This document shows, one piece after another, positions 8,568 to 56,664 of a DNA stretch of 64,000 nucleotides. Each line of letters begins with the position of its first letter. Positions within the stretch are counted from its first letter, which is position 1. The translations under genes were made by a program, and so were the position numbers. Under the pieces are notes generated by a model, which saw nothing but the letters and a program-made list of their open reading frames with translations, did no database searches and had not been told where the DNA came from. This stretch comes from Macrostomum lignano. Lineage: Eukaryota. The stretch covers positions 1-64,000 of the forward strand of contig NIVC01001205.1 of NCBI GenBank assembly GCA_002269645.1, in the 5' to 3' direction.

Positions 8568-8600
8568 GGCTTGAGAGCGCCATTTTCCTTTTTTCCCGGT

Positions 8601-9155
8601 GGGATGCCATTTCCTCATTTGGGATGCCATTTCCTGAATTGAGACGCCATTTCCTTAGTCAGGATGCCATTTCCTTAATTAGGATGCCATTTCCTCAATT
8701 GGGATGCCATTTCCTTTATTGGGATGCCATTTCCTCAATCGGGATGCTATTTCCTCAATTGGGATGCCATTTCCTCAATTGGGATGCCATTTCCTCAATT
8801 GGGATGCCATTTTCTCAATTGGGATGCCATTTCCTCAATTGGGATGCCATTTCCTTTATTGGGATGCCATTTCCTCAATTGGGATGCCATTTCCTTTGGG
8901 ATGCCATTTTCTCAATTGGGATGCCATTTCCTTTATTGGGATGCCATTTCCTCAATTGGGATGCCATTTCCTTTGGGATGCCATTTTCTCAATTGGGATG
9001 CCATTTCCTTTTTTGGGATGCCATTTCCTCAATTGGGATGCCATTTCCTCAATTGGGATGCCATTTCCTCAATTGGGATGCCATTTCCTTTATTGGGATG
9101 CCATTTTCTCAATTGGGATGCCATTTCCTCAATTGGGATGCCATTTCCTCAACCA
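8601..9155. repeat. 20-bp minisatellite downstream of the MTMR14 stop (3' UTR or intergenic)
   Basis: Unit GGGATGCCATTTCCTCAATT with occasional short variants. Confidence 0.95.
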
Positions 9156-9741
9156 GAATGCAATTTCTTTACTGGGGTTTCCTAATTGTCCTAATTCTTC
9201 TGCCCAGTCGCTAAAGGAATGTTACATTTCGAATCATGTCATTCACTTTTAAAAGTGCATTGGTTACTTTCCTTTAGTTTATTACTATAGCCGTTTCTGT
9301 TAGACGAAGTCAAATCGCGTATTTATTGATTAATTTAGTTGTAATAATGATCATATAGTTTGTATTTCTGTTTCTCAAACGTTAAACGCATGAAGTTTTT
9401 CATATTTTTATTGTGCTACTAAAGTCAGTTGTGTTAGTAGTGTAATGCGCATGCATAATTATAAATCAGAATTATTTTTAAATATATTATATATACTAAC
9501 TAGTTACTGTAAAAGACATTTAAAAAAAGATTATGGTTCCAAACTAACGCATACTCTAATCTATTCAATCTTCTAAGTGTGCGTAGCTTTATTTACTTTT
9601 AATTTAACTTTAATTACGACTAGTTTAAGCAATTATTTGAGTCTGTTTTATATTTCGCTCACACGGACTTATAACAAAGCAAGCAATCGTACAGTATGCG
9701 ACCAAGTTTTCCTGCATCATGCTGGATGATGCAGCATTCTC

Positions 9742-11716
9742 TACCTGTCAGGTAATTCCTCACCAAACGATTCCTGCCTGTCAGACACAACCTTCCACCT
9801 GTCAGGTAATTCCTCACCAAACGATTCCTGCCTGTCAGACACAACCTTCCACCTGTCAGGTAATTCCTCACCAAACGATTCCTGCCTGTCAGGCACAACC
9901 TTCCACCTGTCAGGTAATTCCTCACCAAACGATTCCTGCCTGTCAGGCACAACCTTCCACCTGTCAGGTAATTCCTCACCAAACGATTCCTGCCTGTCAG
10001 GCACAACCTTCCACCTGTCAGGTAATTCCTCACGAAACGATTCCTGCCTTCAGGCACAACCTTCCACCTGTCAGGTAATTCCTCACCAAACGATTCCTGC
10101 CTGTCAGACACAACCTTCCACCTGTCAGGTAATTCCTCACCAAACGATTCCTGCCTGTCAGGCACAACCTTCCACCTGTCAGGTAATTCCTCACCAAACG
10201 ATTCCTGCCTGTCAGACACAACCTTCCACCTGTCAGACACAACCTTCCACCTGTCAGGTAATTCCTCACCAAACGATTCCCCGCCTGTCAGACACAACCT
10301 TCCACCTGTCAGACACAACCTTCCACCTGTCAGACACAACCTTCCACCTGTCAGACACAATTCTTTACCTGTCAGACACAACCCCCACCTGTAAGACACA
10401 ATTCCCCAACCTGTCAGACACAATTTCCCTCCTGTCAGACACAACCCTTAACCTGTCAGAAACAATTTCCCACCTGTCAGACACAATTTCCCACCTGTCA
10501 GACACAACCCCCACCTGTAAGACACAATTCCCCAACCTGTCAGACACAATTTCCCACCTGTCAGACACAACCCTTAACCTGTCAGAAACAATTTCCCACC
10601 TGTCAGACACAATTTCCCACCTGTCAGACACAACCCTTAACCTGTCAGAAACAATTTCCCACCTGTCAGACACAATTTCCCACCTGTCAGACACAACCCT
10701 TAACCTGTCAGAAACAATTTCCCACCTGTCAGACACAACCCCCAACCTGTCAGACACAACTCTCCACCTGTCAGACACAATTCCCCACCTGTCAGACACA
10801 ACTCTCCACCTGTCAGACACAATTCCCCACCTGTCAGACACAATTCCCCACCTGTCAGACACAATTCCCCACCTGTCAGACACAACTCTCCACCTGTCAG
10901 ACACAACCCTTAACCTGTCAGAAACAATTTCCCACCTGTCAGACACAACCCCCAACCTGTCAGACACAATTCCCCACCTGTCAGACACAACTCTCCACCT
11001 GTCAGACACAACCCTTAACCTGTCAGAAACAATTTCCCACCTGTCAGACACAACCCCCAACCTGTCAAACACAACTCTCCACCTGTCAGACACAATTCCC
11101 CACCTGTCAGACACAACTCTCCACCTGTCAGACACAATTCCCCACCTGTCAGACACAATTCCCCACCTGTCAGACACAACTCTCCACCTGTCAGACACAA
11201 TTCTCCACCTGTCAGACACAATTCCCCACCTGTCAGACACAACTCTCCACCTGTCAGACACAATTCCCCACCTGTCAGACACAACTCTCCACCTGTCAGA
11301 CACAATTCTCCACCTGTCAGACACAACTCTCCACCTGTCAGACACAATTCCCCACCTGTCAGACACAACTCTCCACCTGTCAGACACAATTCCCCGCCTG
11401 TCAGACACAATTCCCCACCTGTCAGACACAATTCCCCACCTGTCAGACACAACTCTCCACCTGTCAGACACAATTCTCCACCTGTCAGACACAATTCCCC
11501 ACCTGTCAGACACAACTCTCCACCTGTCAGACACAATTCCCCACCTGTCAGACACAACTCTCCACCTGTCAGACACAATTCTCCACCTGTCAGACACAAC
11601 TCTCCACCTGTCAGACACAATTCCCCAACCTGTCAGACAACCCTCCACCTGTAAGACACAACTCCCAACTGTCAGACACAACCTTCCACCTGTCAGACAC
11701 AACCCTCAATCTGTCA
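9742..11716. repeat. Composite minisatellite: a 54-bp unit grading into a 21-bp unit
   Basis: From 9742 to about 10280 the unit is ACCTGTCAGGTAATTCCTCACCAAACGATTCCTGCCTGTCAGACACAACCTTCC. After that it is CACCTGTCAGACACAAYYYYC, ending about 45 bp from the nAChR stop. Confidence 0.95.
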
Positions 11717-11760
11717 GGTACATGTACAAAACCAACTTCAAGTTAAGCTTGCTCGCACTG

Positions 11761-14700
11761 CTAGGCCACCTCCTTGAACAGCGGCATGATGACCAGGATG
11801 ACGATGGTGGATCCAAACGCGGCCACCAGGAACAACCAGAACAGCATTCTGTCAACAATGAAGGCCAGCATTCGCCAATCGTTAATTAACAATTGGGCAG
11901 CCTCTTCTTCAACCTGGCGCCTGATGAGGCGTCTCAGATGCCGGTAGACATGGTCGTACTCTTGGTACTTGCGTCCGAGCAGCAGAGAAGCCGGTTGCTG
12001 CTGCTGGGGCCTCGCTAAGCCGCTGGGTCCGGCTGCTGTGGCTGCCGAGGCGGTCGGGCTGTCATCGGTGGCTCCCCGGTTGGCGATGGTGCCGCGTCGG
12101 TTGTCCTCCTCCATGATGGCGTCGTCTGCCGCCGTCAGGAACTGCCCGTTGCAGCTGCCGGGACTGCCTGCGACTTTTCTCGGCTGCTGGTCAGCTACTG
12201 CTGGTTGTGGCGATGTCGAGGTGCCGAGTAGTTCGACCTCTTCCGGCTGTTGCTGCTGCTGGCGGCACTCTTCGAACTTTTGACGCCTTTTTCGGGCGCG
12301 TTTCTGGTATCGAGCGACAGAGCTCATGCAGAGCATCCGGGCTGCCAGGTTGAAGAAGAAATGCTTCAGCCTTGGCGGCACCGGTTTGTCGTTCGGCCCG
12401 ATGTGGTGCAGATGGAGCACGAATACCGTCAGCACGATTGACAGCGATGTGGTGGACATGGTCACCGTCAGGTAGATGCCTGCGTGTGTTGATATTATAT
12501 TGAGTATTTTACACTGTGACAGAGTATTGCTGCTAGTGAAAAACTTGATTTACACAATTGTTAATGTTTTTATAGAATCATATATATGAATCACGAAGTT
12601 ATCTAATTCACACAATTTTTATTTTGTTCACACACTTATCTTACGCACACAGTTATCTTATTCACACAAACATCTTATTCACACAGCTGTATTGTTCACA
12701 CAACTATCTTGTTCACACAGTTATCTGATTCACACAACTATCATATTCACACAAGCATCTTATTCACACAGCTGTATTGTTGACACAGCTACAGTGTTTA
12801 GACAACTATCTTGTTCACACAAGTTTCCAACTCACAAATAAAACAGATTCACACAAGGAAGTACATGTAGATTTTCAAAACAATCGCAAATTTCATAGCA
12901 CCATAAGTCAGCTGATTAATAGAAGAACTTCACGTTCACTCAAGCCATTAATTCACACTAAGGTGGGTCGCTCACCAATAAGCGGCACGAACTCGCTAGT
13001 GGCCGGCATGTTCTCAGCGATGAGCAGCATGAAGACTGAGAAGGCCAGCAGCACTGTGATACCCAGGGTGATCTTCTCCCCGAGTCGGGTGGCAACCAGA
13101 ATCCCAGCAGGCTGAGTACGGTGAGCCACAGGCAGGGGAAGATGATGTTGAACAGATAGTACAGGGTGCGCCTGCGGATCACTATGTGGAACTTGATGTC
13201 CGGGTAGGGCACCGGGCTGATGGGGTAGACGGTCTGGAATGGTTTTGGAGAGGTAGAGGTTTTTATTTATTGGCTGGTGACATTTGGGTTAGATTTAGCT
13301 GAGACAGCTGAGATTAGATTTAGCCTGAGACAGCTGAGATTAGATTTAGCCTGAGCCAGCTGAGATTAGATTTAGCCTGAGCCAGCTGAGATTAGATTTA
13401 GCTGAGATTAGATTTAGCCTGGGACAGCTGAGATTAGATTTAGCCTGAGACAGCTGAGATTAGATTTAGCCTGAGACAGCTGAGATTAGATTTAGCTGAG
13501 ATTAGATTTAGCCTGAGACAGCTGAGATTAGATTTAGCCTGAGACAGCTGAGATTAGATTTAGCCTGAGCCAGCTGAGATTAGATTTAGCCTGAGACAGC
13601 TGAGATTAGATTTAGCCTGAGACAGCTGAGATTAGATTTAGCCTGAGACAGCGGAGATTAGATTTAGCTGAGATTAGATTTAGCCTGAGCCAGCTGAGAT
13701 TAGATTTAGCCTGAGACAGCTGAGATTAGATTTAGCCTGAGACAGCTGAGATTAGATTTAGCCTGAGACAGCGGAGATTAGATTTAGCTGAGATTAGATT
13801 TAGCCTGAGCCAGCTGAGATTAGATTTAGCCTGAGACAGCTGAGATTAGATTTAGCCTGAGACAGCTGAGATTAGATTTAGCCTGAGACAGCGGAGATTA
13901 GATTTAGCTGAGATTAGACTTCGCTGAGATTATATTTGTCTGATACAGCTGAGATTAGCCCCCGATCGATGAGAATAGATCCTTAGCAGACCGGAAATTA
14001 GACTAGATCAACAAGCATCCGAGCTGAAAAAATTTGCAATGCAGTAACAGAACTCAAAGCAGACTTATTGAACCTTTTGCTCAAGGCTCCAAGGCTCCTA
14101 TCAAGTTCATGATCTGCTCTGCTCTCACTCGACACCATCTGGAGCGGTCCAGACAAAATTCTACTTCACAAATATTGAGAGCTCGGCCGCTGCAGCAGCA
14201 CCCTTCCCAGGCAGAAATTTGATTAAAGAGACTTGGGCGGCCGCTGGACTGCCCACTACAATCCCCTGGGGTACTCGGGCGTTAATAAGTTTACTAGGCT
14301 CTGTAAACTTATAAATTTTGTTGGCCTTGTTTAGTCAAACTAAATAAAATTACGAGATACGCGTCAATACTTGCTAACATGTAAGACTCCTAACGAAGTA
14401 CCCTGGTGTTTCGAATAGATTTATTGCAGTATTTCACTCCCGTTAAGTATCTATTTCCATCAGTTCCATGTCTATTTCCATCAGTTCCATGTCTATTTCC
14501 ATCAGTTCCATGTCTATTTCCATCAGTTCCGTGTCTATTGCCATCAGTTCCATGTCTGTTTCCATCAGTTCCATGTCTATTTCCATCAGTTCCATATCTA
14601 TTTCCATCAGTTCCATGTCTATTTCCATCAGTTCCATGTCTATTTCCATCAGTTCCATGTCTATTTCCACCAGTTCCATGTCTATTTCCATCAGTTCCAT

Positions 14701-17700
14701 GTCTATTTCCATCAGTTCCATGTCTATTTCCATCAGTTCCATGTCTATTTTCATCAGTTCCATGTCTATTTCCATCAGTTCCATGTCTGTTTCCATCAGT
14801 TCCATAGCTATTTCCATCAGTTCCATGTCTATTTCCATCAGTTCCATGTGTATTTCCATCAGTTCCATGTCTATTTCCATCAGTTCCATATCTATTTCCA
14901 TCAGTTCCATGTCTATTTCCATCAGTTCCATGTGTATTTCCATCAGTTCCATGTCTATTTCCATCAGTTCCATGTCTATTTTCATCAGTTCCATGTCTAT
15001 TTCCATCAGTTCCATGTCTATTTCCATCAGTTCCATAGCTATTTCCATCAGTTCCATGTCTATTTCCATCAGTTCCATATCTATTTCCATCAGTTCCATA
15101 TCTATTTCCATCAGTTCCATATCTATTTCCATCAGTTCCATGTCTATTTCCATCAGTTCCATGTCTATTTCCATCAGTTCCATGTGTATTTCCATCAGTT
15201 CCATATCTATTTCCATCAGTTCCATGTCTATTTCCATCAGTTCCATGTCTATTTCCATCAGTTCCATGTCTATTTCCATCAGTTCCATATCTATTTCCAT
15301 CAGTTCCATATCTATTTCCATCAGTTCCATGTCTATTTCCATCAGTTCCATGTCTATTTCCATCAGTTCCATATCTATTTCCATCAGTTCCATGTCTATT
15401 TCCATCAGTTCCATGTGTATTTCCATCAGTTCCATGTCTATTTCCATCAGTTCCATATCTATTTCCATCAGTTCCATGTCTATTTCCATCAGTTCCATGT
15501 GTATTTCCATCAGTTCCATGTCTATTTCCATCAGTTCCATGTGTATTTCCATCAGTTCCATATCTATTTCCATCAGTTCCATGTCTATTTCCATCAGTTC
15601 CATATCTATTTCCATCAGTTCCATGTCTATTTCCATCATTTCCATGTCTATTTCCATCAGTTCCATGTCTATTTCCATTAGTTCCATATCTACTTCTTAA
15701 GGTTCCACATCAATTTCCTTAGGTTCCAAATCCAGGTCACTGATCTCACCTCCTGCCGTTCCACATCGATTCGAATCAGATTCCACTCTCCGCTTTGAAC
15801 ATAATTTTGAAAGTCCACTTCCTCGCGCCTGAAAGTGTTGTCAAGATGTCACGTGATTTAAATAAAAAATTCTCGATGGTTGAACAGAAGATCGAACCAA
15901 CTTCTTGGTGATGTTCACTTGATAACCATCGTAGGTCCACGAGCCGAACTTCATGGTGCAAATCTGATCGTCAAACGGGAAATACGTGATGTCGATCTTG
16001 CAGGTGGATCGCAGCTTGGCGGGTGGGGGCCAAAACACGGTGCCGTTCGCGTCCACCATCGCCTTGCTCTGCATGTAGCCTGTGGTGAAGTCATCAGCAC
16101 TGCGTCAGGTGTAGGGGTTGGGGGTCACGGTTGACTTTGATGTGTCAGTGTCTGTAGAATCAGTGTGTCAGTGTCTGTAGAATCAGTGTGTCAGTGTCTG
16201 TAGAATCAGTGTGTCAGTGTCTGTAGAATCAGTGTGTCAGTGTCTGTAGAATCAGTGTGTCAGTGTCTGTAGAATCAGTGTGTCAGTGTCTGTAGAATCA
16301 GTGTGTCAGTGTCTGTAGAATCAGTGTGTCAGTGTCTGTAGAATCAGTGTGTCAGTGTCTGTAGAATCAGTGTGTCAGTGCCTGTAGAATCAGTGTGTCA
16401 GTGTCTGTAGAATCAGTGTGTCAGTGTCTGTAGAATCAGTGTGTCAGTGTCTGTAGAATCAGTGAGTCAGTGTCTGTAGAATCAGTGTGTCAGTGTCTGT
16501 AGAATCAGTGTGTCAGTGGTGTCTGTAGAATCAGTGTGTCAGTGTCTGTAGAATCAGTGTGTCAGTGCCTGTAGAATCAGTGTGTCAGTGTCTGTAGAAT
16601 CAGTGTGTCAGTGTCTGTAGAATCAGTGTGTCAGTGTCTGTAGAATCAGTGTCACCTGTTGTACAGCACAATGTCAGGCAGCCAGATTTTCTGACACGGC
16701 ACTCGCAGCACTTCCAGCCCGTTGTAGTCCTTCGGGTCCCAATGCAGCCTCTCGTCGTGCCACTCCTGTTTTGATTGACAGGTGGACAGGTCTCTATGTT
16801 TAATTTGTGATAATCAGTAATTGATTCTTAGGATATGTCAGGACATACAGTAAAATTGAATTCTGTGTTTTGACGGACACATACTGACACATCTACTTAA
16901 GCGGTACTGTGTACTGACACATCTACTTAAGCACTACTGACACATCTACTTAAGCACTACTGACACATCTACTTAAGAACTACTGACACATCTACTTAAG
17001 CACTACTGACACATCTACTTAAGAACTACTGACACATCTAATTAAGCACTACTGACACATCTACTTGAGCACTACTGACACATCTACTTAAGAACTACTG
17101 ACACATCTAATTAAGCACTACTGACACATCTACTTAAGCACTACTGACACATCTAATTAAGCACTACTGACACATCTACTTAAGCGCTACTGACACATCT
17201 AATTTGAATCCTAACAATCGATTTTATGACTTCATGAATCCAAGGTAAAAAAAATCAACCTTAAGTTTCATTCAGTTTTCAAGTTCCCAAACTTTAAAGA
17301 TTCGAAGATCGAACTTTCGAACTGTTTGTAAGTCACGACTCAATCCCTTCAAAAGCCGCTCCTTCATCTCTTTTTAGGCAGCTGGATTCTCAAGTGAAGT
17401 GGCGGCGGCGGTGAAGCACTCGCTAAACTCGAACAGCGACAGAGCAGATCGGGCAGTCTCGCATCCCAGCTGCTCCCCTAATAGGAACACGAAATTCCCT
17501 AAGCCTATGCACATTAGCAATCATTAGGTTCTGCATAGACAAAAAGTACATGTTTATACATTTCATTCTCTCTAGAAAATTGAGTTTCAGAATCGAATTC
17601 TGCGAGAGAAGTTATAGAAAGCAATCCTGCTTCTCTTTAAGGATAAAACTTTTCTTCTTCTTTTTATCTGTCAATGCCTTTTTTGCCGCCTATAGTTGGA

Positions 17701-20559
17701 AAGTGCAAGATGTTTTATTAAATATTTATAATTTATCTTATGGTCACCAAACCATGATAAAATCGTCTTAGTCCCCCCTCTGACCAACCATATATTACTG
17801 CTAAGATGTCAGCAGCAGTGTTGCTAGGGAGGTTGAAAATATTATCTGTGAATTTTTAAGCTTGCAGTCTGGTTTGGTCAGCAGGGCTGGCCATAGACTA
17901 TCGCTGCCCAGTTTTGGGCTGGTCAGCAGGGCTGGCCATAGACTATCGCTGCCCAGTTTTGGGCTGGTCAGCAGGGCTGGCCATAGAGTATCGCTACCCA
18001 GTTTTGGGCTGGTCAGCAGGGCTGGCCATAGACTATCGCTACCCAGTTTTGGGCTGGTCAGCAGGGCTGGCCATAGACTATCGCTACCCAGTTTTGGGCT
18101 GGTCAGCAGGGCTGGCCATAGACTATCGCTACCCAGTTTTGGGCTGGTCAGCAGGGCTGGCCATAGACTATCGCTGCCCAGTTTTGGGCTGGTCAGCAGG
18201 GCTGGCCATAGACTATCGCTACCCAGTTTTGGGCTGGTCAGCAGGGCTGGCCATAGACTATTGCTACCCAGTTTAACACACTCTGCTATGCACACAGTGG
18301 TCTCAAACTTATTTCTAAGATAAATCGCTTTTAGTGTCTCTATTATACTGCACTTTTCTAAAGATACACCGCGATATGTGATATGTGATTATCAGAATGT
18401 CTTCAAGGACTTTAAGTCAGTGCTATGACGGATCGCTCATTTCTAAAAGTACATTTCAAGCTAACCTGTTCAAGCCAAACGTTTGTCGTTAGAACCTGGT
18501 TGACCTCGTCCTGAAACAGAAAGAAAACAATAATGGATAATATTATTCAGAAGCTTTCAGTTGCTTTCAAGTTAGATAATTAAGGTATAAAAAATCTTGA
18601 TAAATGACTGCAGGTATGGCAAACCATATCCGTGATGAGGATCAGTGCGAAGCCGAACGTCACCGTGACCTGATCGGACGCGTTGATCACCGGACGAACG
18701 GAGGCGTCGTAACGCTGCATCATCGCCTCCATCAGTCTCTGTTCGTCCGGTTTAACCCGACCAGGCCTGGGTTCGAGCGCTCCTGCTGGGGTGGTGATAG
18801 ATGGGGAATCAGGGAGGATAAACCAAACTCACCAGCTGAGAGATCTGCACCATGGCTATCTGGAATCGAACTTCAACAGTTTTTCCAGCATGAATTGTCG
18901 GCCTGGATGCCGGATCGTACGAGGACAATATTCGATGCAGAAGTCTTTGTTCGTCAGTCCAAGTGGACTGATTGAACGCAGAGCATTCGCTACATCTGCT
19001 GGCTACAAAGACTATGATGGAACAAAGAGTTAAGAGTCCAGTTGGTCTGCCGTGCATGTCTGTAATGTCCGTTGTTCGAGAAGCGTGTAGCTAAGGGAAT
19101 CCACAAGCGACGGTATGGCCTTTTTAGTAGAGATTCGCCACTCGCAATTCGTCAGTTGATTTGTCAACAGACCATGGGGAAGAGAGAGACAGACTCAGCT
19201 CGCAGCTTGTCTCTCTATTCTCAGCCTTCCTCCCGCCCTGGTCGAATTTGTGGAGCAGCTCGAAGCAAGAACTCAAAACGCCACGTCGCCTCGCATTGTA
19301 ACACGCCTCAGCGGCCCTTTGCTCTACCTCTGATCTATATTGACTGGGATAACTTCGTTATTCAGACTGTGGTGAGCTTTTAGGCCTCTCCTGATCATCG
19401 GCTTGCTGCCTACTGGGTGCACGCGAGCATCAAAATATGTTTTTCTTTTTTGACAAAAAACACTTTTTTATGCAGGTGTTTTTCTGCGTTAATTATAATT
19501 AATTTTCGCTGTCAGAGAAATTCTTTATTTCGATTTTTTACAATTAACTACGAGTAATAAAATCGTCGTTATTATTCTTTTTTTACTACTGACAGTAGAC
19601 TGTTGAGGTATTTGTTGAATTTTTCTAGTTGGGAATCTTTGAGAAGTTTTTCTTCGAATCGTAGAGTTTTCAGTTAATCCTCATGATCCAAGCTCCAGCT
19701 CAATGCACACTGAAACGGATTAAGGGAGCTTTCTAGGAAACACCTGCTCAGATTCGATGATAAATTGATGCTGCTGAGTTGAAAATGCATCAAACCCTGG
19801 TAAAGGATTATTTAAAACTTTCCTGAGTTTTACGGCTTAACAGGTTTTGCTAGTTGGGTTACAGTTTGCAGGCTTTGAGCTCCACTGCTCAGTAGTAGTT
19901 TTTGTAGTTTGTGAGAGTTTCTGTAGTTTGTGAGAGTTTCTGTTTAGTTTGTGAGAGTTTCTGTTTAGTTTGTGAGAGTTTCTGTTTAGTTTGTGGGAGT
20001 TTCTGTAGTTTGTGAGGGTTTCTGTTTAGTTTGTGAGAGTTTCTGTTTAGTTTGTGAGAGTTTCTGTTTAGTTTGTGGGAGTGTCTGTTTAGTTTGTGAG
20101 AGTTTCTGTTTAGTTTGTGAGAGTTTCTGTTTAGTTTGTGAGAGTTTCTGTTTAGTTTGTGAGAGTTTCTGTTTAGTTTGTGAGAGTTTCTGTTTAGTTT
20201 GTGAGACTTTCTGCTGTTAAAAAATCTTTCAAAACGCAATTAGAAACTATTCTAAATTAAAAGTGGTCAATTTAGTCCCTAGGAAACTGCTCAAAATGTC
20301 ATTGCTGTGACATCCTAAAAAAGAGTTTTCCCACGAAGTACACGTAACACCGAATCAAATTACCTTCACTTTAACTAACTTTTGGCTTTCCAGTGCCCCA
20401 ACAAAACAACTAAGAAAGTTAATCAAATCAAGCTCACTCAACCCTACCTGAGACTTGAGTAGCTACAGTGCCAGAAACCAGAAGCAGACTTGAAGAAGCA
20501 GCAAAGATTAAAAGCAGGCTTTTCTTCAACAAGAAGTTGTCGAGTGCTTTAAGAGCCAT
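11761..20559 (-). CDS. Nicotinic acetylcholine receptor (Cys-loop, cation-type) subunit, non-alpha-like, 8 exons; one-base frameshift in this assembly
   Basis: join(20559-20448, 18782-18625, 18510-18466, 16765-16656, 16099-15902, 15828-15750, 13233-12976, 12479-11761); all junctions are GT-AG and phase-compatible. Has a signal peptide, [33 protein letters not shown], Cys-loop [23 protein letters not shown]1-M3 ([11 protein letters not shown]; [12 protein letters not shown]) and M4 ([15 protein letters not shown]). Confidence 0.95.
12605..12835. repeat. Degenerate ~17-18-bp repeat (TTCACACAGTTATCTTR) in the last nAChR intron
   Basis: Recurrent TTCACACA cores in tandem. Confidence 0.75.
13290..13960. 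repeat. 26-bp minisatellite with 16-bp truncated variants (nAChR intron)
   Basis: Unit CAGCTGAGATTAGATTTAGCCTGAGA. Confidence 0.95.
14449..15695. repeat. 21-bp minisatellite, about 59 copies (nAChR intron)
   Basis: Unit TCTATTTCCATCAGTTCCATG; source of the spurious MELMEID and SISISSM ORFs. Confidence 0.97.
16141..16652. repeat. 23-bp minisatellite filling nAChR intron 16655-16100
   Basis: Unit TGTGTCAGTGTCTGTAGAATCAG; runs to within a few bases of the donor. Confidence 0.97.
16880..17200. repeat. 23-bp minisatellite (nAChR intron)
   Basis: Unit TACTGACACATCTACTTAAGCAC. Confidence 0.95.
17871..18275. repeat. 45-bp minisatellite, about 9 near-identical copies (nAChR intron)
   Basis: Unit GGTCAGCAGGGCTGGCCATAGACTATCGCTACCCAGTTTTGGGCT. 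Confidence 0.97.
18833..19057 (-). CDS. Alternative nAChR N-terminal exon (paralogous to exon 18782-18625)
   Basis: Encodes [27 protein letters not shown]...[42 protein letters not shown] and ends at a phase-0 GTGAGT donor (18832) compatible with exon 18510-18466. Confidence 0.8.
19905..20212. repeat. 21-bp minisatellite (nAChR intron 1)
   Basis: Unit GTTTAGTTTGTGAGAGTTTCT. Confidence 0.95.
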
Positions 20560-20859
20560 TCTGAACTGCTGTTCAACTCAATTTTCTGTTGATAAAAACC
20601 TTGAAGATTTTCAGCCTCTCTGCTTCAGCTGCGGTTACCATGGTGGGGGGAAGTGATCTTATGCTCTCGAAGGAAGCTGGGAACAGATGGAGCAGCTAAA
20701 TTCACTGCCATTGGTTGCCACGGTGCAGAAACTTCGTAAGAATTTTCAGCTAGCAAAGAGGCAAAAGAGTTCTTGTCTGAGTGTGAATTTAATTTAATTC
20801 AGTATGTTCAGACAGTGATCAAAGCAGCGCTCAAGTCAGTGACATAAGTCTCTCATCAG

Positions 20860-21610
20860 TGACCTTGAGGCTGAAATCTGTGACCTTAACACTTAAATCA
20901 GTGACCTTGGGGCTGAAAGAAGTGACCTTGACCCTCAAATCAGCGACATTGACCCTCAAATCAGTTGACATTTACCCTCAAATCAGTTGACATTGACCCT
21001 CAAATCAGTGATATTGACCCTCAAATCAGTGACATTGACCCTCAAATCAGTTGACATTGACCCTCAAATCAGTGATATTGACCCTCAAATCAGTTGACAT
21101 TGACCCTCAAATCAGTGACATTTACCCTCAAATCAGTGATATTGACCCTCAAATCAGTGATATTGACCCTCAAATCAGTTGACATTGACCCTCAAATCAG
21201 TGATATTGACCCTCAAATCAGTTGACATTGACCCTCAAATCAGTGATATTGACCCTCAAATCAGTGACATTGACCCTCAAATCAGTGATATTGACCCTCA
21301 AATCAGTTGACATTGACCCTCAAATCAGTGATATTGACCCTCAAATCAGTTGACATTGACCCTCAAATCAGTGATATTGACCCTCAAATCAGTTGACATT
21401 GACCCTCAAATCAGTGATATTGACCCTCAAATCAGTGACATTGACCCTCAAATCAATGACCTTGTCCATCAAATCAGTGAAATTGTCCCTCAAATCAGTG
21501 ATATTGACCCAAAAATCAGTCCCCTTGACCCTCAAATCAGTGACATTGTCCCTCAAATCACTGACCTTAACACTCAAATCAGTGACCTTGAGGCTGAAAT
21601 CAGTGACCTT
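20860..21610. repeat. 21/22-bp minisatellite upstream of the nAChR gene
   Basis: Mixed units GATATTGACCCTCAAATCAGT and TGACATTGACCCTCAAATCAGT, with degenerate edges. Confidence 0.95.
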
Positions 21611-22004
21611 GACGGTAATGTCAGTGAAATTAGCAAATTTTCAAATCGACATTTTTCATCAACTGAGCTGATCACATCGATTGGTATATCACATTGGCAT
21701 AAAAACATTTGGGCGGTTCACTTCACTTATAGCTTCATTACAGCCTTACGGTTTAAGATACATTTTATGATCTTTCGTGCGCAATTTCGCACTACGAGCT
21801 TAAAGTCTTCCTAATTGGATTGGATTTTTATGGCTTCCGGTATAATTTTTTTCGGGGTTGAACGCGTCTGTTTTCTTGACTTGTCTGTGCCTGTCTGATA
21901 GTACTCGTAGGTTCACCAATGGCAGACCGCAATGTCCCTTATGGCTGAAGCTAAATATGCTGCCAGTTGCCATTAGTTAAGAATTCTCGCTTCTGCCGTA
22001 ACAA

Positions 22005-23360
22005 CTCTCCCTTCTCTCCCTCTCAACTCCTCCCTCTCCCTTCTCTCCCTCTCACCTCCTCACTCTCCCTTCTCTCCCTCTCAACTCCTCCCTCTCCCTT
22101 CTCTCCTCTCCAGTCTCTCCCTCTCACCTTCTCCCTCTCCCTTCTCTCCCTCTCACCTCCTCCCTCTCCCTTCTCTCCCTCTCACCTTCTCCCTCTCCCT
22201 TCTCTCCCTCTCACCTCCTCCCTCTCCCTTCTCTCCCTCTCACCTCCTCCCTCTCCCTTCTCTCCTCTCCAGTCTCTCCCTCTCACCTCCTCCCTCTCCC
22301 TTCTCTCCCTCTCACCTCCTCCCTCTCCCTTCTCTCCTCTCCAGTCTCTCCCTCTCACTTCTCTCCCTCTCACCTCCTCCCTCTCCCTTCTCTCCCTCTC
22401 ACCTCCTCCCTCTCCCTTCTCTCCCTCTCACCTCCTCCCTCTCCCTTCTCTCCTCTCCAGTCTCTCCCTCTCACCTCCTCCCTCTCCCTTCTCTCCTCTC
22501 CAGTCTCTCCCTCTCACCTCCTCCCTCTCCCTTCTCTCCTCTCCAGTCTCTCCCTCTCCCTTCTCTCCTCTCCAGTCTCTCCCTCTCCCTTCTCTCCCTC
22601 TCCCTTCTCTCCTCTCCAGTCTCTCCCTCTCCCTTCTCTCCTCTCCAGTCTCTCCCTCTCACCTCCTCCCTCTCCCTTCTCTCCTCTCCAGTCTCTCCCT
22701 CTCCCTTCTCTCCTCTCCAGTCTCTCCCTCTCCCTTCTCTCCCTCTCCCTTCTCTCCTCTCCAGTCTCTCCCTCTCCCTTCTCTCCTCTCCAGTCTCTCC
22801 CTCTCACCTCCTCCCTCTCCCTTCTCTCCTCTCCAGTCTCTCCCTCTCCCTTCTCTCCTCTCCAGTCTCTCCCTCTCCCTTCTCTCCCTCTCCCTTCTCT
22901 CCTCTCCAGTCTCTCCCTCTCCCTTCTCTCCTCTCCAGTCTCTCCCTCTCCCTTCTCTCCCTCTCCCTTCTCTCCCTTCTCTCCCTCTCACCTCCTCCCT
23001 CTCCCTTCTCTCCCTCTCACCTCCTCCCTCTCCCTTCTCTCCCTCTCACCTCCTCCCTCTCCCTTCTCTCCTCTCCAGTCTCTCCCTCTCACCTCCTCCC
23101 TCTCCCTTCTCTCCTCTCCCTTCTCTCCCTCTCCCTTCTCTCCTCTCCAGTCTCTCCCTCTCACCTCCTCCCTCTCCCTCTCTCCCTCTCCCTTCTCTCC
23201 CTCTCACCTCCTCCCTCTCCCTTCTCTCCTCTCCAGTCTCTCCCTCTCCCTTCTCTCCCTCTCCCTTCTCTCCCTTCTCTCCCTCTCACTTCTCTCCCTC
23301 TCCTCCTCCTCCTCTCTCTCTGTCTCTCTCTCTCTCTGTCTCTCTCTCTCTCTCTACCTT
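22005..23360. repeat. Polypyrimidine/polypurine (CT-rich) low-complexity tract
   Basis: About 1.35 kb of almost only C/T, built from CTCTCCCTCTCACCTCCTCC and CTCTCCAGTCT modules. Confidence 0.95.
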
Positions 23361-23891: not shown

Positions 23892-26800
23892 ATGGCTGCA
23901 ATTAACGTTGTCAGCTGGCTCCTGATTCTGGGGCTGTTCTCTCACTGTTCAGCCACAAATATTCGACTCAATACCGATTACAGGCTTGATAACATTCTGA
24001 TTTTAGTTCAGAATGAAAACTTTGCCTCGGTTGATAACATGAAGGCGCTTAAAGTGAGTCAGGCTATTTTCAGAATAAAAAATATTTGTTATCGTATTTT
24101 CTATGGTAACTGCCACATACAGACTCTCATCCCATCTCACCTCCACTCTCACCCCGGTCCCCATCTCACCTCCACTCTCACCGCATCTCTCCTGCACTCT
24201 CACCCCATCTCTTCTCTACTCTCACTCAATCTCACCTCCACTCTCACCCCATCTCTCCTCCACTCTCACCCCATCTCTTCTCTACTCTCACCCCATCTCT
24301 ACTTCACTCTCACCCAATCTCACATCCACTCTCACCCCATCTCTCCTCCACTCTCACCCAATCTCACCTCCATTCTCACCTAATCTCACATCCACTATCA
24401 CCCCATCTCTCCTCCACTCTCATCCCATCTCACCTCCACTCTCACCCCATCTCACCTCCACTCTCACCCCAAGTCACCTCCACTCTTACCCCATCTCACC
24501 TCCAACCTCACCCCTTCCGTCCGCAGGGCTATCTAGCCTATGTTTCGCACCAGATGGCCCGAGCAACCGAGGCTGTTGGGCGGCGCATTTCCATTAATAC
24601 TGTCCGCCTGCTGGTTCCGCCAAGTAAAATCGCTGAGCTAAAGAATGCTGGCGTCTTCCCGTCCATGCCCGCCACCTGGGAATCCGAGGTCTCCGCCGAT
24701 GTCGTGCTGGAGAATCCTGGTGGAAAAGTGAAGACCATCCCGGCCGATGAGTGCTACGGGCCAAACAAATGGATTAAAATGCCCGAATACACGGTTCGGA
24801 GGAACGGTGAGTGACAAGTTCGCGTCTCGCTTCCATATGAGAGCTGAAGGGTAGGCGAACTGGGCCTGAGCCCTCTCCAACCTGTCCCTGTCTGTCTGTC
24901 TGACTGTCTGTCCCCGTCTCCAACCTGTCCCTGTCTGTCTGTCTGACTGTCTGTCCCCGTCTCCAACCTGTCCCTGTCTGTCTGTCTGACTGTCTCCAAC
25001 CTGTCCCTGTCTGTCTGTCTGACTGTCTCCAACCTGTCCCTGTCTGTCTGTCTGACTGTCTGTCCCCGTCTCCAACCTCTCTCTGCCTGTCTGTCTGTCC
25101 CTGTCCTCGACATGCCTGTCCGTGTCCCCAACCTCTCCCTGTCTCCCTGTCCCTGTCTCCAACCTCCCCCTGTCTGTCTGTCCCTGTCCCCGACCTCTCC
25201 CTGTCTGTCCGTCCCTGTCTCTGACCTCTCCCTGTCTGTCTGTCCCTGTCTCCAACCTGTCCCTGTCTGTCTATCCTTGTCTCCAACCTGTCCCTGTCTG
25301 TCTGTCCCCGTCTCCAACCTCTCCCTGTCTGTCTGCCCATGTCTCCAACCTCTCCCTGACTGTCTGCCCATGTCTCCAACCTCTCCCTGTCTGTCTGTCC
25401 CCGTCTCCAACCTCTCCCTGTCTGTCTGTCCCCGTCTCCAACCTCTCCCTGACTGTCTGTCCCTGTCTCCAACCTCTCCCTGTCTGTCTGTCCCTGTCTC
25501 TAACCTCTCCCTGTCTGTCCCTGTCTCCAACCTCTCCCTGTCTGTCTGTCCCTGTCTCCAACCTCTCCCTGTCTGTCCCTGTCTCCAACCTCTCCCTGTC
25601 TGTCTGTCCCTGTCTCCAACCTCTCCCTGTCTGTCCCTGTCTCCAACCTCTCCCTGTCTGTCTGTCCCTGTCTCCAACCTCTCCCTGTCTGTCCCTGTCT
25701 CCAACCTCTCCCTGTCTGTCTGTCCCTGTCTCCAACCTCTCCCTGACTGTCTGTCCATGTCTCCAAACTCTCCCTGACTGTCTGTCCATGTCTCCAACCT
25801 CTCCCTGTCTGTCTGCCCATGTCTCCAACCTCTCCCTGACTGTCTGCCCATGTCTCCAACGTCTCCCTGTCTGTCTGTCCCCGTCTCCAACCTCTCCCTG
25901 TCTGTCTGTCCCCGTCTCCAACCTCTCCCTGACTGTCTGTCCCTGTCTCCAACCTCTCCCTGTCTGTCTGTCCCTGTCTCCAACCTCTCCCTGACTGTCT
26001 GTCCATGTCTCCAACCTCTCCCTGACTGTCTGTCCCTGTCTCCAACCTCTCCCTGTCTGTCTGCCCATGTCTCCAGCCTCTCCCTGTCTGTCTGCCCATG
26101 TCTCCAACCTCTCCCTGACTGTCTGCCCATGTCTCCAACCTCTCCCTGTCTGTCTGTCCATGTCTCCAACCTCTCCCTGTCTGTCTGTCCCTGTCTCCAA
26201 CCTCTCCCTGTCTGTCTGTCCCTGTCTCCAACCTCTCCCTGTCTGTCTATCCCTGTCTCCAACCTGTCCCTGTCTGTCTGTCTGACTGTCTGTCCCGTCT
26301 CCAACCTCTCTCTGCCTGTCTGTCTGTCCCTGTCCCCGACATGCCTGTCCGTGTCCCCGACCTCTCCCTGTCTCCCTGTCCCTGTCTCCAACCTCCCCCT
26401 GTCTTTCTGTCCCTGTCCCCGACCTCTCCCTGTCTGTCCGTCCCTGTCTCTGACCTCTCCCTGTCTGTCTGTCCCTGTCTCCAACCTGTCCCTGACTGTC
26501 TGCCCATGTCTCCAACCTCTCCCTGACTGTCTGTCCATGTCTCCAACCTGTCCCTGTCTGTCTGTCCGTGTCTCCAACCTCTCCCTGTCTGTCTGTCCCT
26601 GTCTCCAACCTCTCCCTGTCTGTCCCTGTCTCCAACCCCCGTCCCTTTCTCAAAAGCAGAGAAAGCAATGCTGTTTACTTTCCTTGATTCATCTATTGAT
26701 TTAATTCCAGCAACTGCCAATAGTTTTCTCCGCGAGCTGTCCATCTACCTGTGGGGCCTGCTGTCAGAGTCGGTCAGCGGAGTGCAGTTCTATCAGGATG

Positions 26801-45337: not shown

Positions 45338-56095
<10,758 letters not shown>

Positions 56096-56664
56096 CTGAA
56101 GGCTGACGTTCAGTCTTGTTAATCTTACCAAAGAGATACCATACCGATTTTGTACCGAACCGAAACTCATTCAAAACTTTATTGTTTTATATTTTATTTT
56201 ATTGAGTAAGTTTAGAAAGTAGAATAAAGCTGTGCTTATATCATGCTGTGGGACACCCTGGGGCACACTATCCTGCCCATTCCGCGCTGAGCTACTGAGC
56301 ACATGTATTCAAGCGGTCAGGCAGGTACACGCTCTCATGGCCTCATGGCTGATGTAGATACACTTGTGATAGCTTTGGTTATCTGTATGTAATATTTACA
56401 CAGAAAATCTTTTAAGTAAAATTGAAATTTGTTTTTTTACTATAAACTCTGCTTACTCTGGATTTGTTTATTTGTTTTAATTCAATTGCGATGGACCATG
56501 AAACTGTCTAAAAAAATATGCTATCCATCCAGATTTTGAATTTTACTTGCATATATGACTTTTATACTGTACTTCACAAACTTTCGTCTGGGTACCCCAG
56601 TGGCATAATGTCAATGTTGAAAACTGGGAAAAGATAAATTCCCTCCTTGAATTCCCCTTCCACC

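What the first reader, a model, noticed from the sequence alone, without database searches (positions are those of the whole stretch)
18625..20559. nAChR has two duplicated, mutually incompatible N-terminal exons (helix to beta1)
Seen: exon 19057-18833 ([41 protein letters not shown]) and exon 18782-18625 ([41 protein letters not shown]) are homologous, and both end at phase-0 donors that fit exon 18510. Only 50 nt separate them and the second starts in phase 1, so joint inclusion would frameshift. The downstream copy needs the signal exon 20559-20448 (phase 1). The upstream copy has its own ATG and signal-like peptide, and also a phase-1 TTTGTAG acceptor at 19003 that could take exon 1. Known: insect alpha4/alpha6 subunits use mutually exclusive versions of the next (45-bp) exon. 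I am not aware of duplication of this exon, which affects the subunit interface and assembly. Inference: one locus makes two or three receptor isoforms.
Basis: partly seen in the sequence, partly recalled or inferred. Interest (0 to 1): 0.75.

Follow-up and report, generated by a model that had tools for sequence, protein, structure and literature searches.

The report
Ancient alternative first exons, flatworm nicotinic receptor
A nicotinic acetylcholine receptor gene of the flatworm Macrostomum lignano carries two homologous, mutually incompatible versions of its first extracellular coding segment, and the same paired-exon layout is found in molluscs, a nemertean, a brachiopod and another flatworm, where transcripts use one or the other.

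Summary
In detail: every coordinate, reading frame and splice phase checks out. The setting is wrong, because the gene belongs to the flatworm Macrostomum lignano, not an insect.

- **Upstream copy (19057-18833, "S" exon):** it has its own ATG and signal peptide.
- **Downstream copy (18782-18625, "B" exon):** it has a phase-1 acceptor and needs signal exon 20559-20448.
- **Incompatibility:** the copies lie 50 nt apart, and joining them gives a stop codon.

The layout e1 – S – short spacer – B – 45-nt exon 3, with the same phases, recurs in five other species. The spacers are 29 nt (Cichlidogyrus), 37 (Lineus), 56 (Biomphalaria), 60 (Patella) and 191 (Lingula).

In eight mollusc, nemertean and brachiopod species, RefSeq isoforms differ only in this segment. 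Assembled oyster transcripts show both forms. Schistosoma keeps only the S exon, and M. lignano's S exon is 59% identical to it, so the upstream copy is not a dead duplicate.

I conclude that this is an old pair of alternative 5' coding exons. A third isoform is unsupported. I found no M. lignano transcripts. This copy also has a 1-nt frameshift in exon 7, which is either an assembly error or a sign of a pseudogene. I found no published description of the exon pair.

The parts
20448..20559 (-). Exon 1 (e1). It encodes the signal peptide [37 protein letters not shown] plus 1 nt, with a phase-1 donor CAG|GTAGGG. It serves the B exon only. A CAG lies 1 nt upstream of the ATG (gttCAGaATG).
   Evidence: Phase-1 signal exons sit in the same position in Lineus, Lingula, Patella and Biomphalaria.
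19060..19065 (-). TTACAG, 2 nt upstream of the S-exon ATG. It matches the M. lignano spliced-leader trans-splice acceptor motif [T/C]TNCAG and is a candidate SL acceptor. If exon 1 used it in cis, the product would also be in frame.
   Evidence: Sequence. Motif from PMC8629364. Background frequency of the motif is 0.002 per nt on this strand. Function is inferred only.
18833..19057 (-). Exon 2a, the 'S' exon. It is an alternative first coding exon with its own ATG, a signal-like peptide, the N-terminal helix and strand beta1, and it ends at a consensus phase-0 donor CTG|GTGAGT.
   Evidence: It is 59% identical to the corresponding exon of three trematodes, compared with 36% to 2b.
19003..19009 (-). 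It is in frame but has a weak pyrimidine tract, and none of the RefSeq isoforms read in other species matches it.
18783..18832 (-). The 50-nt spacer between the S donor and the B acceptor: gtgagtttggtttatcctccctgattccccatctatcaccaccccagcag. Branch-point-like CTGAT and TCTAT lie 24 and 34 nt from the donor. An alternative donor A|GTTTGG, 4 nt further downstream, would join the two exons in frame across a 46-nt intron.
   Evidence: The UniRef model P0002 uses the 46-nt version. Homologous spacers measure 29-191 nt.
18625..18782 (-). Exon 2b, the 'B' exon. It has a phase-1 acceptor, a short basic pre-helix stretch (RPGRVKP), the helix and beta1, and a phase-0 donor ATG|GTTTGC.
   Evidence: It is 45% identical to the downstream exon of Cichlidogyrus. 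It scores 7 bits higher on the B profile than on the S profile.
18466..18510 (-). Exon 3, 45 nt, [15 protein letters not shown] (beta1-beta2 loop and beta2). Both versions share it.
   Evidence: The exon is identical or nearly so in all orthologues examined.
16656..16765 (-). Exon 4.
15902..16099 (-). Exon 5. It contains the Cys-loop [15 protein letters not shown].
15750..15828 (-). Exon 6.
12976..13233 (-). Exon 7 (loop C without vicinal cysteines, TM1, TM2). The run of 4 G at 13078-13081 is one base short of the conserved reading ...PPDSGEKITLG..., so the frame breaks here.
   Evidence: Near-identical M. lignano proteins P0001 and P0004 read through intact.
11761..12479 (-). Exon 8 (TM3, intracellular loop, TM4, stop codon TAG at 11763-11761).

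Best explanation
The two exons are an old pair of alternative 5' coding exons of a flatworm nicotinic-receptor subunit gene. The gene is the Macrostomum lignano orthologue of the Lymnaea 'type G' / 'alpha-10-like' group of spiralian animals.

**The two transcript types (inferred for this species).**
- One type starts at exon 1 (signal peptide) and splices to the B exon 18782-18625. The S exon is then simply part of intron 1.
- The other type starts at the S exon 19057-18833, which supplies its own start codon and signal peptide, and splices straight to exon 3, skipping B.

**Why both exons cannot be used together.**
- S is a first exon.
- The S donor lies only 50 nt from the B acceptor, and 24-34 nt from B's likely branch points. 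That is near or below the size of a workable intron.
- The phases clash (0 into 1), so a joint product stops after 17 codons.

**Result.** One subunit is made with two different N-terminal tails, helices and beta1 strands. The segment ends at the loop that couples binding to gating. The two forms probably sit under separate 5' control.

**What is shown and what is inferred.** Shown: the anatomy, its conservation, and either/or use in other species. Inferred: use in M. lignano, the steric block, and any functional difference between the forms.
For: - **Anatomy and frames:** verified.
- **Organism and family:** the top hits are M. lignano proteins at 78-96% identity, followed by spiralian 'alpha-10-like' subunits at 54-57%. 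Both Pfam receptor domains are present.
- **Isoforms elsewhere:** in Haliotis, Lineus, Patella, Octopus, Lingula and Biomphalaria, RefSeq isoforms are identical from DEVNQ onward. They differ only in the preceding segment, each with its own Met. Crassostrea virginica shows the same N-terminal difference.
- **Same gene layout:** e1 (phase 1) – S (own ATG, phase-0 donor) – spacer – B (phase-1 acceptor, phase-0 donor) – 45-nt exon 3 is found in Lineus (37-nt spacer), Biomphalaria (56), Patella (60) and Lingula (191). The S – spacer – B – exon 3 part is also found in the monogenean Cichlidogyrus (29-nt spacer), where no e1 was sought in the short contig.
- **Transcripts:** two oyster transcript contigs are 99.4% identical from the exon-2/3 border onward and unrelated upstream. 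cDNA-derived entries exist for the B form in Lymnaea (type G) and the S form in Aplysia.
- **The S exon is conserved:** Schistosoma has only the S exon. M. lignano 2a is 59% identical to the trematode exons and shares their unusual ...FQ...QI(S/N)QL ending.
- **No sign of repeated recent duplication:** S-to-B identity within a species (61.4%) equals S-to-B identity between species (61.4%), while S-to-S identity between species is 69.2%.
- **Known mechanisms:** sub-minimal intervening introns and frameshift plus mRNA decay are established ways to keep exons mutually exclusive (PMC4165533).
Against: - I found no M. lignano transcript or junction read. The protein searches returned none, and they also missed the known model P0002, so they are not exhaustive.
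- A 50-nt intron may be spliceable in this species; its minimum intron size is not known to me. The shortest intron in this gene is 73 nt. A donor 4 nt downstream would join the two exons in frame.
- 2a has lost the conserved NAS glycosylation site and is the more divergent copy.
- Sequence alone assigns the S and B types only weakly: +3.7 bits for 2a and +7.0 bits for 2b. By mean identity, 2b matches the two types equally well.
- This copy has a frameshift in exon 7, so this particular locus may not make a functional protein.
Confidence: 0.75

Rival explanations
1. Both exons are included together. A donor 4 nt downstream of the consensus one (A|GTTTGG, with the exon ending at 18829) removes a 46-nt intron. 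The product is one protein with a tandem duplicated helix-beta1 segment.
For: The frame works. The UniRef model P0002 is built this way. Similar fused models exist for Octopus vulgaris, Nucella, Batillaria and Cichlidogyrus.
Against: - The fused models are all outside RefSeq, and I take them to be ab initio predictions.
- In Cichlidogyrus the fusion would need an intron of under 30 nt.
- In the species with RefSeq annotation, the isoforms read carry one exon or the other and never both.
- The donor is a poor GTTTGG placed next to a consensus GTGAGT.
- A second helix-beta1 in front of the ligand-binding domain has no counterpart in the solved receptor chains matched.
Confidence: 0.05
2. In M. 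lignano exon 2a is a decaying, unused remnant, and only e1 plus 2b is expressed.
For: 2a is the more divergent copy: NAS has become HAG, KFG has become RFQ and DM has become QL. It averages 47% identity to non-flatworm S exons. No transcripts were found.
Against: - The reading frame is intact, with an ATG, a hydrophobic signal-like segment and a consensus GTGAGT donor.
- The 'odd' residues are shared with trematode exons that are the only N-terminal exon found there. Identity is 59%, and the ...FQ...QL ending is shared. They are therefore lineage features rather than decay.
Confidence: 0.1
3. Three isoforms are made. In addition to the two above, exon 1 splices into the S exon, either at 19002 as the reader proposed or at the TTACAG acceptor at 19059.
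For: Both junctions are in frame. If TTACAG is a working acceptor for the spliced leader, the exon 1 donor could also use it in cis.
Against: - No such isoform appears among the RefSeq isoforms read in full for seven species.
- TTTGTAG has a weak pyrimidine tract, whereas the enriched M. lignano acceptor motif is CAG (PMC8629364).
- The 19059 product would carry two hydrophobic signal-like segments in a row.
Confidence: 0.1
4. The whole gene copy in this window is a young pseudogene of the recently duplicated M. lignano genome, so its exon choice has no consequence at this locus.
For: There is a 1-nt frameshift in exon 7, upstream of TM2. The published DV1 assembly is highly redundant, with 180 Mb in non-repetitive blocks of at least 95% identity (PMC5730564).
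Against: - This is the only defect in 1.68 kb of coding sequence, and all splice sites are canonical.
- It lies in a G homopolymer, a typical long-read error site. The published M. lignano assemblies were built from PacBio reads and only polished afterwards.
- The near-identical copies P0001 and P0004 read through it.
- The older M. lignano models show different frame errors in each copy, which looks like sequencing error.
Confidence: 0.3

Closest known systems
RefSeq isoform pairs of 'neuronal acetylcholine receptor subunit alpha-10-like' in Lineus longissimus, Haliotis spp., Patella vulgata, Octopus spp., Lingula anatina, Biomphalaria glabrata and Crassostrea virginica; Lymnaea stagnalis nAChR subunit type G
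   Same: It is the same orthologous gene. The exon order e1 – S – B – exon 3 is the same, the intron phases are the same, and the 45-nt exon 3 (DEVNQVLT...) is the same. One exon or the other is used.
   Different: - In M. lignano the two exons are much more diverged from each other: 36% identity, compared with 48-73% elsewhere.
- The subunit has lost the loop-C cysteine pair.
- The species uses spliced-leader trans-splicing, which may replace a second promoter.
- These isoforms exist only as automated annotation. I found no paper describing them.
Mutually exclusive exons of insect nAChR alpha6 (exon 3a/3b, exon 8a-c) and alpha4 (exon 4/4')
   Same: These are tandem homologous exon duplicates inside the extracellular domain of a nicotinic subunit, and one is chosen per transcript (PMC1919356).
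   Different: - The insect cases are internal cassette exons, each with an acceptor and a donor, and they affect the next exon (beta2 / loop D) or TM2.
- Here the pair is the first coding segment. One member is a first exon with its own start codon and signal peptide, and the clade is a different one.
Mutually exclusive exons kept apart by a too-short intervening intron or by frameshift plus mRNA decay (C. elegans let-2 exons 9/10, egl-15 5A/5B; mammalian alpha-tropomyosin 2/3)
   Same: The distance between the upstream donor and the downstream acceptor is very short: 29-60 nt in five of the six species examined. Joint inclusion breaks the frame (PMC4165533).
   Different: Here the upstream exon is also an alternative first exon, so exclusivity does not rest on the spacer alone. 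Lingula, with a 191-nt spacer, shows the short spacer is not essential.
Alternative first exons / promoters of vertebrate Cys-loop receptor genes (for example GABA-A subunit genes)
   Same: Alternative 5' exons allow separate transcriptional control (PMC1934366).
   Different: From my own knowledge, those mostly change the 5' UTR or the signal peptide. Here about 41 residues of the mature, folded extracellular domain change as well.

Membership tests
Cys-loop (pentameric) ligand-gated channel, nicotinic type | Ligand-binding domain plus four-helix membrane domain | tested here: met
   Neur_chan_LBD E = 1e-67 and Neur_chan_memb E = 3.5e-44. The best solved relatives are human alpha4, alpha3 and alpha7, E about 1e-89.
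Cys-loop (pentameric) ligand-gated channel, nicotinic type | Cys-loop: two cysteines separated by 13 residues | tested here: met
   [15 protein letters not shown] in exon 5.
Nicotinic alpha-type subunit | Vicinal cysteines (YxCC) in loop C | tested here: not met
   Loop C reads ...[13 protein letters not shown], aligned against YECCAEIYPD of human alpha4. Mollusc, nemertean and brachiopod orthologues do have CC.
Functional gene at this locus | Uninterrupted reading frame across all exons | tested here: not met
   One base is missing in the G-run 13078-13081 of exon 7. I could not tell whether this is real or an assembly error.
Spiralian 'type G / alpha-10-like' gene with S/B alternative 5' exons | Order e1 – S – B – 45-nt exon 3, with e1 donor in phase 1, S with its own ATG and a phase-0 donor, and B with a phase-1 acceptor and a phase-0 donor | tested here: met
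   Window. Four other species show the full pattern, and Cichlidogyrus shows the S – B – exon 3 part (no e1 sought).
Spiralian 'type G / alpha-10-like' gene with S/B alternative 5' exons | Transcripts contain S or B, never both | not testable with these tools
   This holds for the other species, from the RefSeq isoforms read and the oyster contigs. I could not retrieve M. lignano transcripts.
Spiralian 'type G / alpha-10-like' gene with S/B alternative 5' exons | Each exon is closest in sequence to its own type in other species | tested here: inconclusive
   - Profile scores: 2a favours S by 3.7 bits and 2b favours B by 7.0 bits. The leave-one-out test was right for 21 of 23 exons.
- By plain identity, 2b matches both types equally.
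- Within flatworms the assignment is clear: 2a is 59% identical to trematode S exons, and 2b is 45% identical to the Cichlidogyrus B exon.
Mutually exclusive exons by steric hindrance | Intervening intron shorter than the species' minimum spliceable intron | tested here: inconclusive
   The spacer is 50 nt, with branch-like motifs 24-34 nt from the donor. I do not know the M. lignano minimum. The shortest intron in this gene is 73 nt. The spacers of 29 and 37 nt in Cichlidogyrus and Lineus are below the roughly 40-nt minimum reported for C. elegans.
Mutually exclusive exons enforced by frameshift and mRNA decay | Double inclusion or double skipping creates a premature stop | tested here: met
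   2a plus 2b gives a stop after 17 codons. e1 joined directly to exon 3 gives a stop after 13 codons. The decay step itself was not tested.
Insect alpha6-type exon 3 alternative splicing | The duplicated exon is the 45-nt exon encoding beta2 / loop D | tested here: not met
   The 45-nt exon is single here (18510-18466). The duplicated exon is the one before it.
Spliced-leader trans-spliced 5' end (M. lignano) | [T/C]TNCAG acceptor directly upstream of the start codon, with SL-containing reads ending there | tested here: inconclusive
   TTACAG lies 2 nt before the 2a ATG, and GTTCAG lies 1 nt before the e1 ATG. The motif comes from PMC8629364. SL reads were not available.

The most novel reading that the evidence does not exclude
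A single nicotinic-receptor gene has kept a two-way N-terminal switch since before flatworms, molluscs, nemerteans and brachiopods diverged. An alternative first exon is nested immediately upstream of its homologue, usually closer than a workable intron.

In M. lignano the switch may not be set by two promoters. It may instead be set by competition, on a single pre-mRNA, between spliced-leader trans-splicing at TTACAG|AC (19060-19065) and cis-splicing from exon 1. The two N-termini would give receptors with different assembly partners, trafficking or gating.
Probability: 0.25. Interest if true: 0.75.

Novelty: new variant of a known kind. Interest (0 to 1): 0.6.

Why it matters
From general knowledge of these receptors, the N-terminal helix and beta1 strand of nicotinic subunits influence folding, assembly and surface expression. 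The segment ends at the beta1-beta2 loop, which couples ligand binding to channel opening.

A deeply conserved either/or choice for exactly this segment suggests that two functionally different receptors are made from one gene in many invertebrate phyla. These include parasitic flatworms and mollusc vectors, in which nicotinic receptors are drug targets.

There are also practical consequences.
- **Annotation:** several public gene models (M. lignano, Octopus vulgaris, Nucella, Batillaria, Cichlidogyrus) wrongly fuse the two exons.
- **Splicing mechanism:** the locus offers a natural series of spacers from 29 to 191 nt for testing how short spacers enforce exon exclusivity.
- **An experimental system:** M. 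lignano can be made transgenic, so the switch can be tested there.

Tried and rejected
- **M. lignano transcripts, protein database:** I searched three times. Nothing with 2a or 2b came back except old UniRef models. The N-terminal searches also missed P0002, which contains both exons, so the absence of hits means little.
- **M. lignano transcripts, exact look-ups:** P0002, the Dimorphilus protein P0013 and the Owenia protein P0028 are not on record, so annelids could not be checked.
- **Haliotis locus:** the gene range was too long to fetch.
- **Structure prediction:** single-sequence AlphaFold2 models of both isoforms had mean pLDDT of 33 and 34.5. They are unusable, so I made no fold comparison.
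- **Type assignment by plain identity:** it does not separate S from B for exon 2b. I rely on position, phase and the flatworm comparisons instead.
- **B exon in Schistosoma:** tblastn found none in the 29-kb intron. A very diverged one cannot be excluded.
- **Insect reading:** rejected, because no arthropod is among the close hits.
- **Literature:** searches found no description of this exon pair. Subscription journals are not covered, for example the original Lymnaea subunit paper.
Full report
**1. The observation**

- **Exon 2a (19057-18833):** an open frame of 75 codons. It starts with ATG and a hydrophobic signal-like segment, continues with the nicotinic-receptor N-terminal helix and strand beta1, and ends at a consensus donor CTG|GTGAGT in phase 0.
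- **Exon 2b (18782-18625):** it starts in phase 1 behind a C-rich tract and CAG, encodes a homologous helix-beta1 segment, and ends at ATG|GTTTGC in phase 0.
- **Common exon 3 (18510-18466):** both copies join it in frame. It is 45 nt and reads [15 protein letters not shown].
- **Exon 1 (20559-20448):** 112 nt, so phase 1. It joins 2b in frame.
- **Spacer:** exactly 50 nt.
- **Forbidden combinations:** joining 2a to 2b gives a stop after 17 codons. Skipping both gives a stop after 13 codons.
- **Homology:** the copies are 16/41 identical (BLASTP E = 2e-11). Either one completes a full-length Pfam ligand-binding domain.

**2. The gene and the organism**

I rebuilt the rest of the gene:

| Exon | Coordinates |
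|---|---|
| 4 | 16765-16656 |
| 5 | 16099-15902 |
| 6 | 15828-15750 |
| 7 | 13233-12976 |
| 8 | 12479-11761 |

- **Domains:** the protein has both receptor domains and the Cys-loop.
- **Solved relatives:** it aligns from DEQ onward with human alpha4, alpha3 and alpha7 structures at E about 1e-89.
- **Subunit type:** loop C lacks the vicinal cysteines, so it is not an alpha-type subunit.
- **Frameshift:** the run of four G at 13078-13081 is one base short of the conserved ...PPDSGEKITLG... reading, so the frame breaks in exon 7.
- **Organism:** it is not an insect. The best hits are Macrostomum lignano proteins at 78-96% identity, followed by 'alpha-10-like' subunits of molluscs, nemerteans, brachiopods and parasitic flatworms at 54-57% over the full length.

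Two facts about M. lignano matter here, both from PMC5730564. Its published DV1 assembly is highly redundant because of additional large chromosomes. About 39% of its genes receive a 35-nt spliced leader. The leader's acceptor motif is given in PMC8629364.

**3. The same exon pair elsewhere**

*Isoforms.* RefSeq lists isoforms of the orthologous gene in Haliotis, Lineus, Patella, Octopus, Lingula and Biomphalaria. They are identical from DEVNQ onward and differ only in the segment before it, each with its own Met and signal peptide. Crassostrea virginica isoforms show the same N-terminal difference.

*Transcripts.*
- Two assembled transcript contigs from different sequencing runs come from an oyster close to C. 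virginica. They are 99.4% identical from the exon-2/3 border onward and unrelated upstream.
- A full-length S-form oyster protein is seen on 28 contigs.
- cDNA-derived entries exist for the B form in Lymnaea (subunit type G) and the S form in Aplysia.

*Gene layout.* I fetched five orthologous loci that carry the exon pair and mapped the exons. The order is always the same:

- a signal exon e1 with a phase-1 donor;
- then, thousands of bases downstream, an 'S' exon with its own ATG and a phase-0 donor;
- then a spacer;
- then a 'B' exon with a phase-1 acceptor and a phase-0 donor;
- then, again thousands of bases downstream, the 45-nt exon 3.

For Cichlidogyrus I mapped only the S – spacer – B – exon 3 part. 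I did not look for an e1 in that short contig.

| Species | Spacer (nt) |
|---|---|
| Cichlidogyrus casuarinus (monogenean flatworm) | 29 |
| Lineus longissimus | 37 |
| Macrostomum lignano (this window) | 50 |
| Biomphalaria glabrata | 56 |
| Patella vulgata | 60 |
| Lingula anatina | 191 |

M. lignano 2a corresponds to S, and 2b corresponds to B.

**4. Is 2a alive?**

- **Schistosoma:** in the sixth locus fetched, S. intercalatum has only the S exon. tblastn finds no B exon in the following 29-kb intron.
- **Identity to trematodes:** M. lignano 2a is 59% identical to the S exons of Schistosoma, Fasciola and Cryptocotyle, compared with 36% to 2b.
- **Shared oddities:** it shares their departures from the general consensus, namely ...(R/G)FQ... 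and a Q-L ending instead of D-M. These are lineage features kept across flatworms, not decay.
- **The B exon:** 2b is closest to the downstream exon of Cichlidogyrus, at 45%, sharing VTFG...LILI(S/T)DM.
- **Profile test:** profiles built from non-flatworm S and B exons place 2a with S (+3.7 bits) and 2b with B (+7.0 bits). The leave-one-out test was right for 21 of 23 exons. This signal is modest.
- **One old duplication:** outside flatworms, S-to-B identity within a species (61.4%) equals S-to-B identity between species (61.4%). S-to-S identity between species is higher, at 69.2%. This fits one old duplication rather than repeated recent ones.

The strongest argument for common origin is the shared order and phases.

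**5. How it most likely works**

*Shown.* The anatomy, its conservation, and either/or use in other species.

*Inferred for M. lignano.*
- Transcripts that begin at e1 splice to B, and S is then intronic.
- Transcripts that begin at S splice to exon 3.
- Joint use is prevented in three ways. S is a first exon. The S donor sits 24-34 nt from the likely branch points of the B acceptor (CTGAT and TCTAT in the spacer). The phases clash.

Short intervening introns, and frameshift with mRNA decay, are established ways of keeping exons mutually exclusive (PMC4165533). The 191-nt spacer of Lingula shows the short spacer is common but not required.

*Possible trans-splicing.* In M. lignano a CAG lies directly upstream of both start codons: ttaCAGacATG for 2a, which matches the [T/C]TNCAG trans-acceptor motif, and gttCAGaATG for e1. 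The S form may therefore begin by spliced-leader addition rather than, or as well as, from its own promoter. This is a lead, not a result.

*What changes in the protein.*
- About 41 residues of the mature domain change: the helix, a loop and beta1, up to the beta1-beta2 loop.
- The tail in front of the helix also differs. B exons of most species carry a strongly basic stretch there, for example RHRRKK, KKKRRNK and RRHRRHH.
- In M. lignano this stretch is only RPGRVKP.

**6. Rivals**

- **Both exons included via a donor 4 nt downstream:** this is in frame and is what the UniRef model P0002 does. The same fusion appears only in models outside RefSeq from other species. In Cichlidogyrus it would need an intron under 30 nt. 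The RefSeq isoforms I read never join the two exons.
- **A third isoform (exon 1 into 2a):** it is in frame at 19002 and at 19059, but none of the RefSeq isoforms read in other species matches it.
- **A dead 2a:** section 4 argues against this.
- **The whole copy as a pseudogene:** this stays open. The frameshift is the only defect, it lies in a homopolymer, and the near-identical copies P0001 and P0004 read through it. Only reads can decide.

**7. Comparison with what is known, and novelty**

The closest described systems are these:

- the insect alpha6 and alpha4 mutually exclusive exons (PMC1919356), which affect other, internal exons;
- sterically enforced exclusive exons in C. elegans and mammals (PMC4165533);
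- alternative first exons of vertebrate receptor genes (PMC1934366), which from my own knowledge mostly change untranslated or signal sequence.

The S/B pair itself is visible in automated RefSeq isoforms. I found no paper describing it, including the survey of lophotrochozoan nicotinic receptors (PMC6896357), which mentions no isoforms. I rate it a new variant of a known kind.

The main gaps are direct M. lignano transcript evidence and the status of the frameshift.

Noticed in passing
window 13078-13081 (minus strand, exon 7): A run of four G is one base short of the conserved reading PPDSGEKITLG, so the frame breaks before TM2. Near-identical M. lignano proteins P0001 and P0004 are intact here. 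It is either an assembly error or a young pseudogene.
   Followed up: partly
window 12976-13233 (loop C region of exon 7): The subunit lacks the loop-C cysteine pair ([11 protein letters not shown]), as do the more distant M. lignano paralogue models P0006, P0043 and P0133. The mollusc, nemertean and brachiopod orthologues keep YxCC. The flatworm gene seems to have changed from an alpha-type to a non-alpha subunit.
   Followed up: partly
window 19058-19065 and 20560-20565 (minus strand): A CAG lies 2 nt and 1 nt upstream of the two start codons (ttaCAGacATG and gttCAGaATG). These may be spliced-leader trans-splice acceptors for both 5' ends.
   Followed up: partly
window 8600-23350: Six of the seven introns of the B-form transcript, and both flanks of the gene, hold long minisatellite arrays. 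Examples: 21 nt x 15 at 19905-20213; 45 nt x 9 at 17875-18274; 23 nt x 22 at 16141-16652; 21 nt x 59 at 14450-15696; 42/63 nt arrays at 10276-11717; and a CT-rich array at 22005-23350. This fits the repeat-rich M. lignano genome.
   Followed up: partly
B exons of orthologues (L003 19903-20069, L004 10598-10770, L006 59106-59380; proteins P0008, P0019, P0021, P0157): B-type exons in most phyla carry a strongly basic stretch just before the helix (RHRRKK, KKKRRNK, RRHRRHH, RSRRIRKGR, GRGRRS). This could be a proprotein-convertase site or a binding motif. S-type exons lack it, and in M. lignano it is only RPGRVKP.
   Followed up: no
proteins P0002 (M. lignano), P0162/P0185 (Octopus vulgaris), P0034 (Nucella), P0132 (Batillaria), P0186 (Cichlidogyrus): These public gene models join the S and B exons in tandem. 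In Cichlidogyrus that requires an intron under 30 nt. They are very likely annotation errors caused by the tight exon pair.
   Followed up: partly
L008 10001-39399 (Schistosoma intercalatum): Only the S exon is found. No B exon is detectable in the 29-kb intron before exon 3, so schistosomes appear to have lost one arm of the switch.
   Followed up: partly
L001 and L002 (oyster transcript contigs): Both contigs keep the same 113-nt intron between exons 4 and 5, which interrupts the reading frame. This is either a frequently retained intron or unspliced precursor.
   Followed up: no
window about 26500-27300, 38900-43800 and 46300-56100 (plus strand): There are three stretches with CLCA-like (calcium-activated chloride channel regulator) and weak VWA matches, probably a tandem gene family. 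A C-type lectin domain lies at 52017-52754.
   Followed up: partly
window 59342-59752 and 61290-61988 (minus strand): A calmodulin-like EF-hand pair (E = 3e-16) and an NHL-repeat ORF. These are neighbouring genes unrelated to the finding.
   Followed up: partly
window about 6400-8600 (minus strand): The old M. lignano models P0003 and P0004 run from the receptor's last exon into ORFs here (for example ...TPRSEPATSRPGPSASS...). There may be a separate downstream gene, or the models may be wrongly fused.
   Followed up: no
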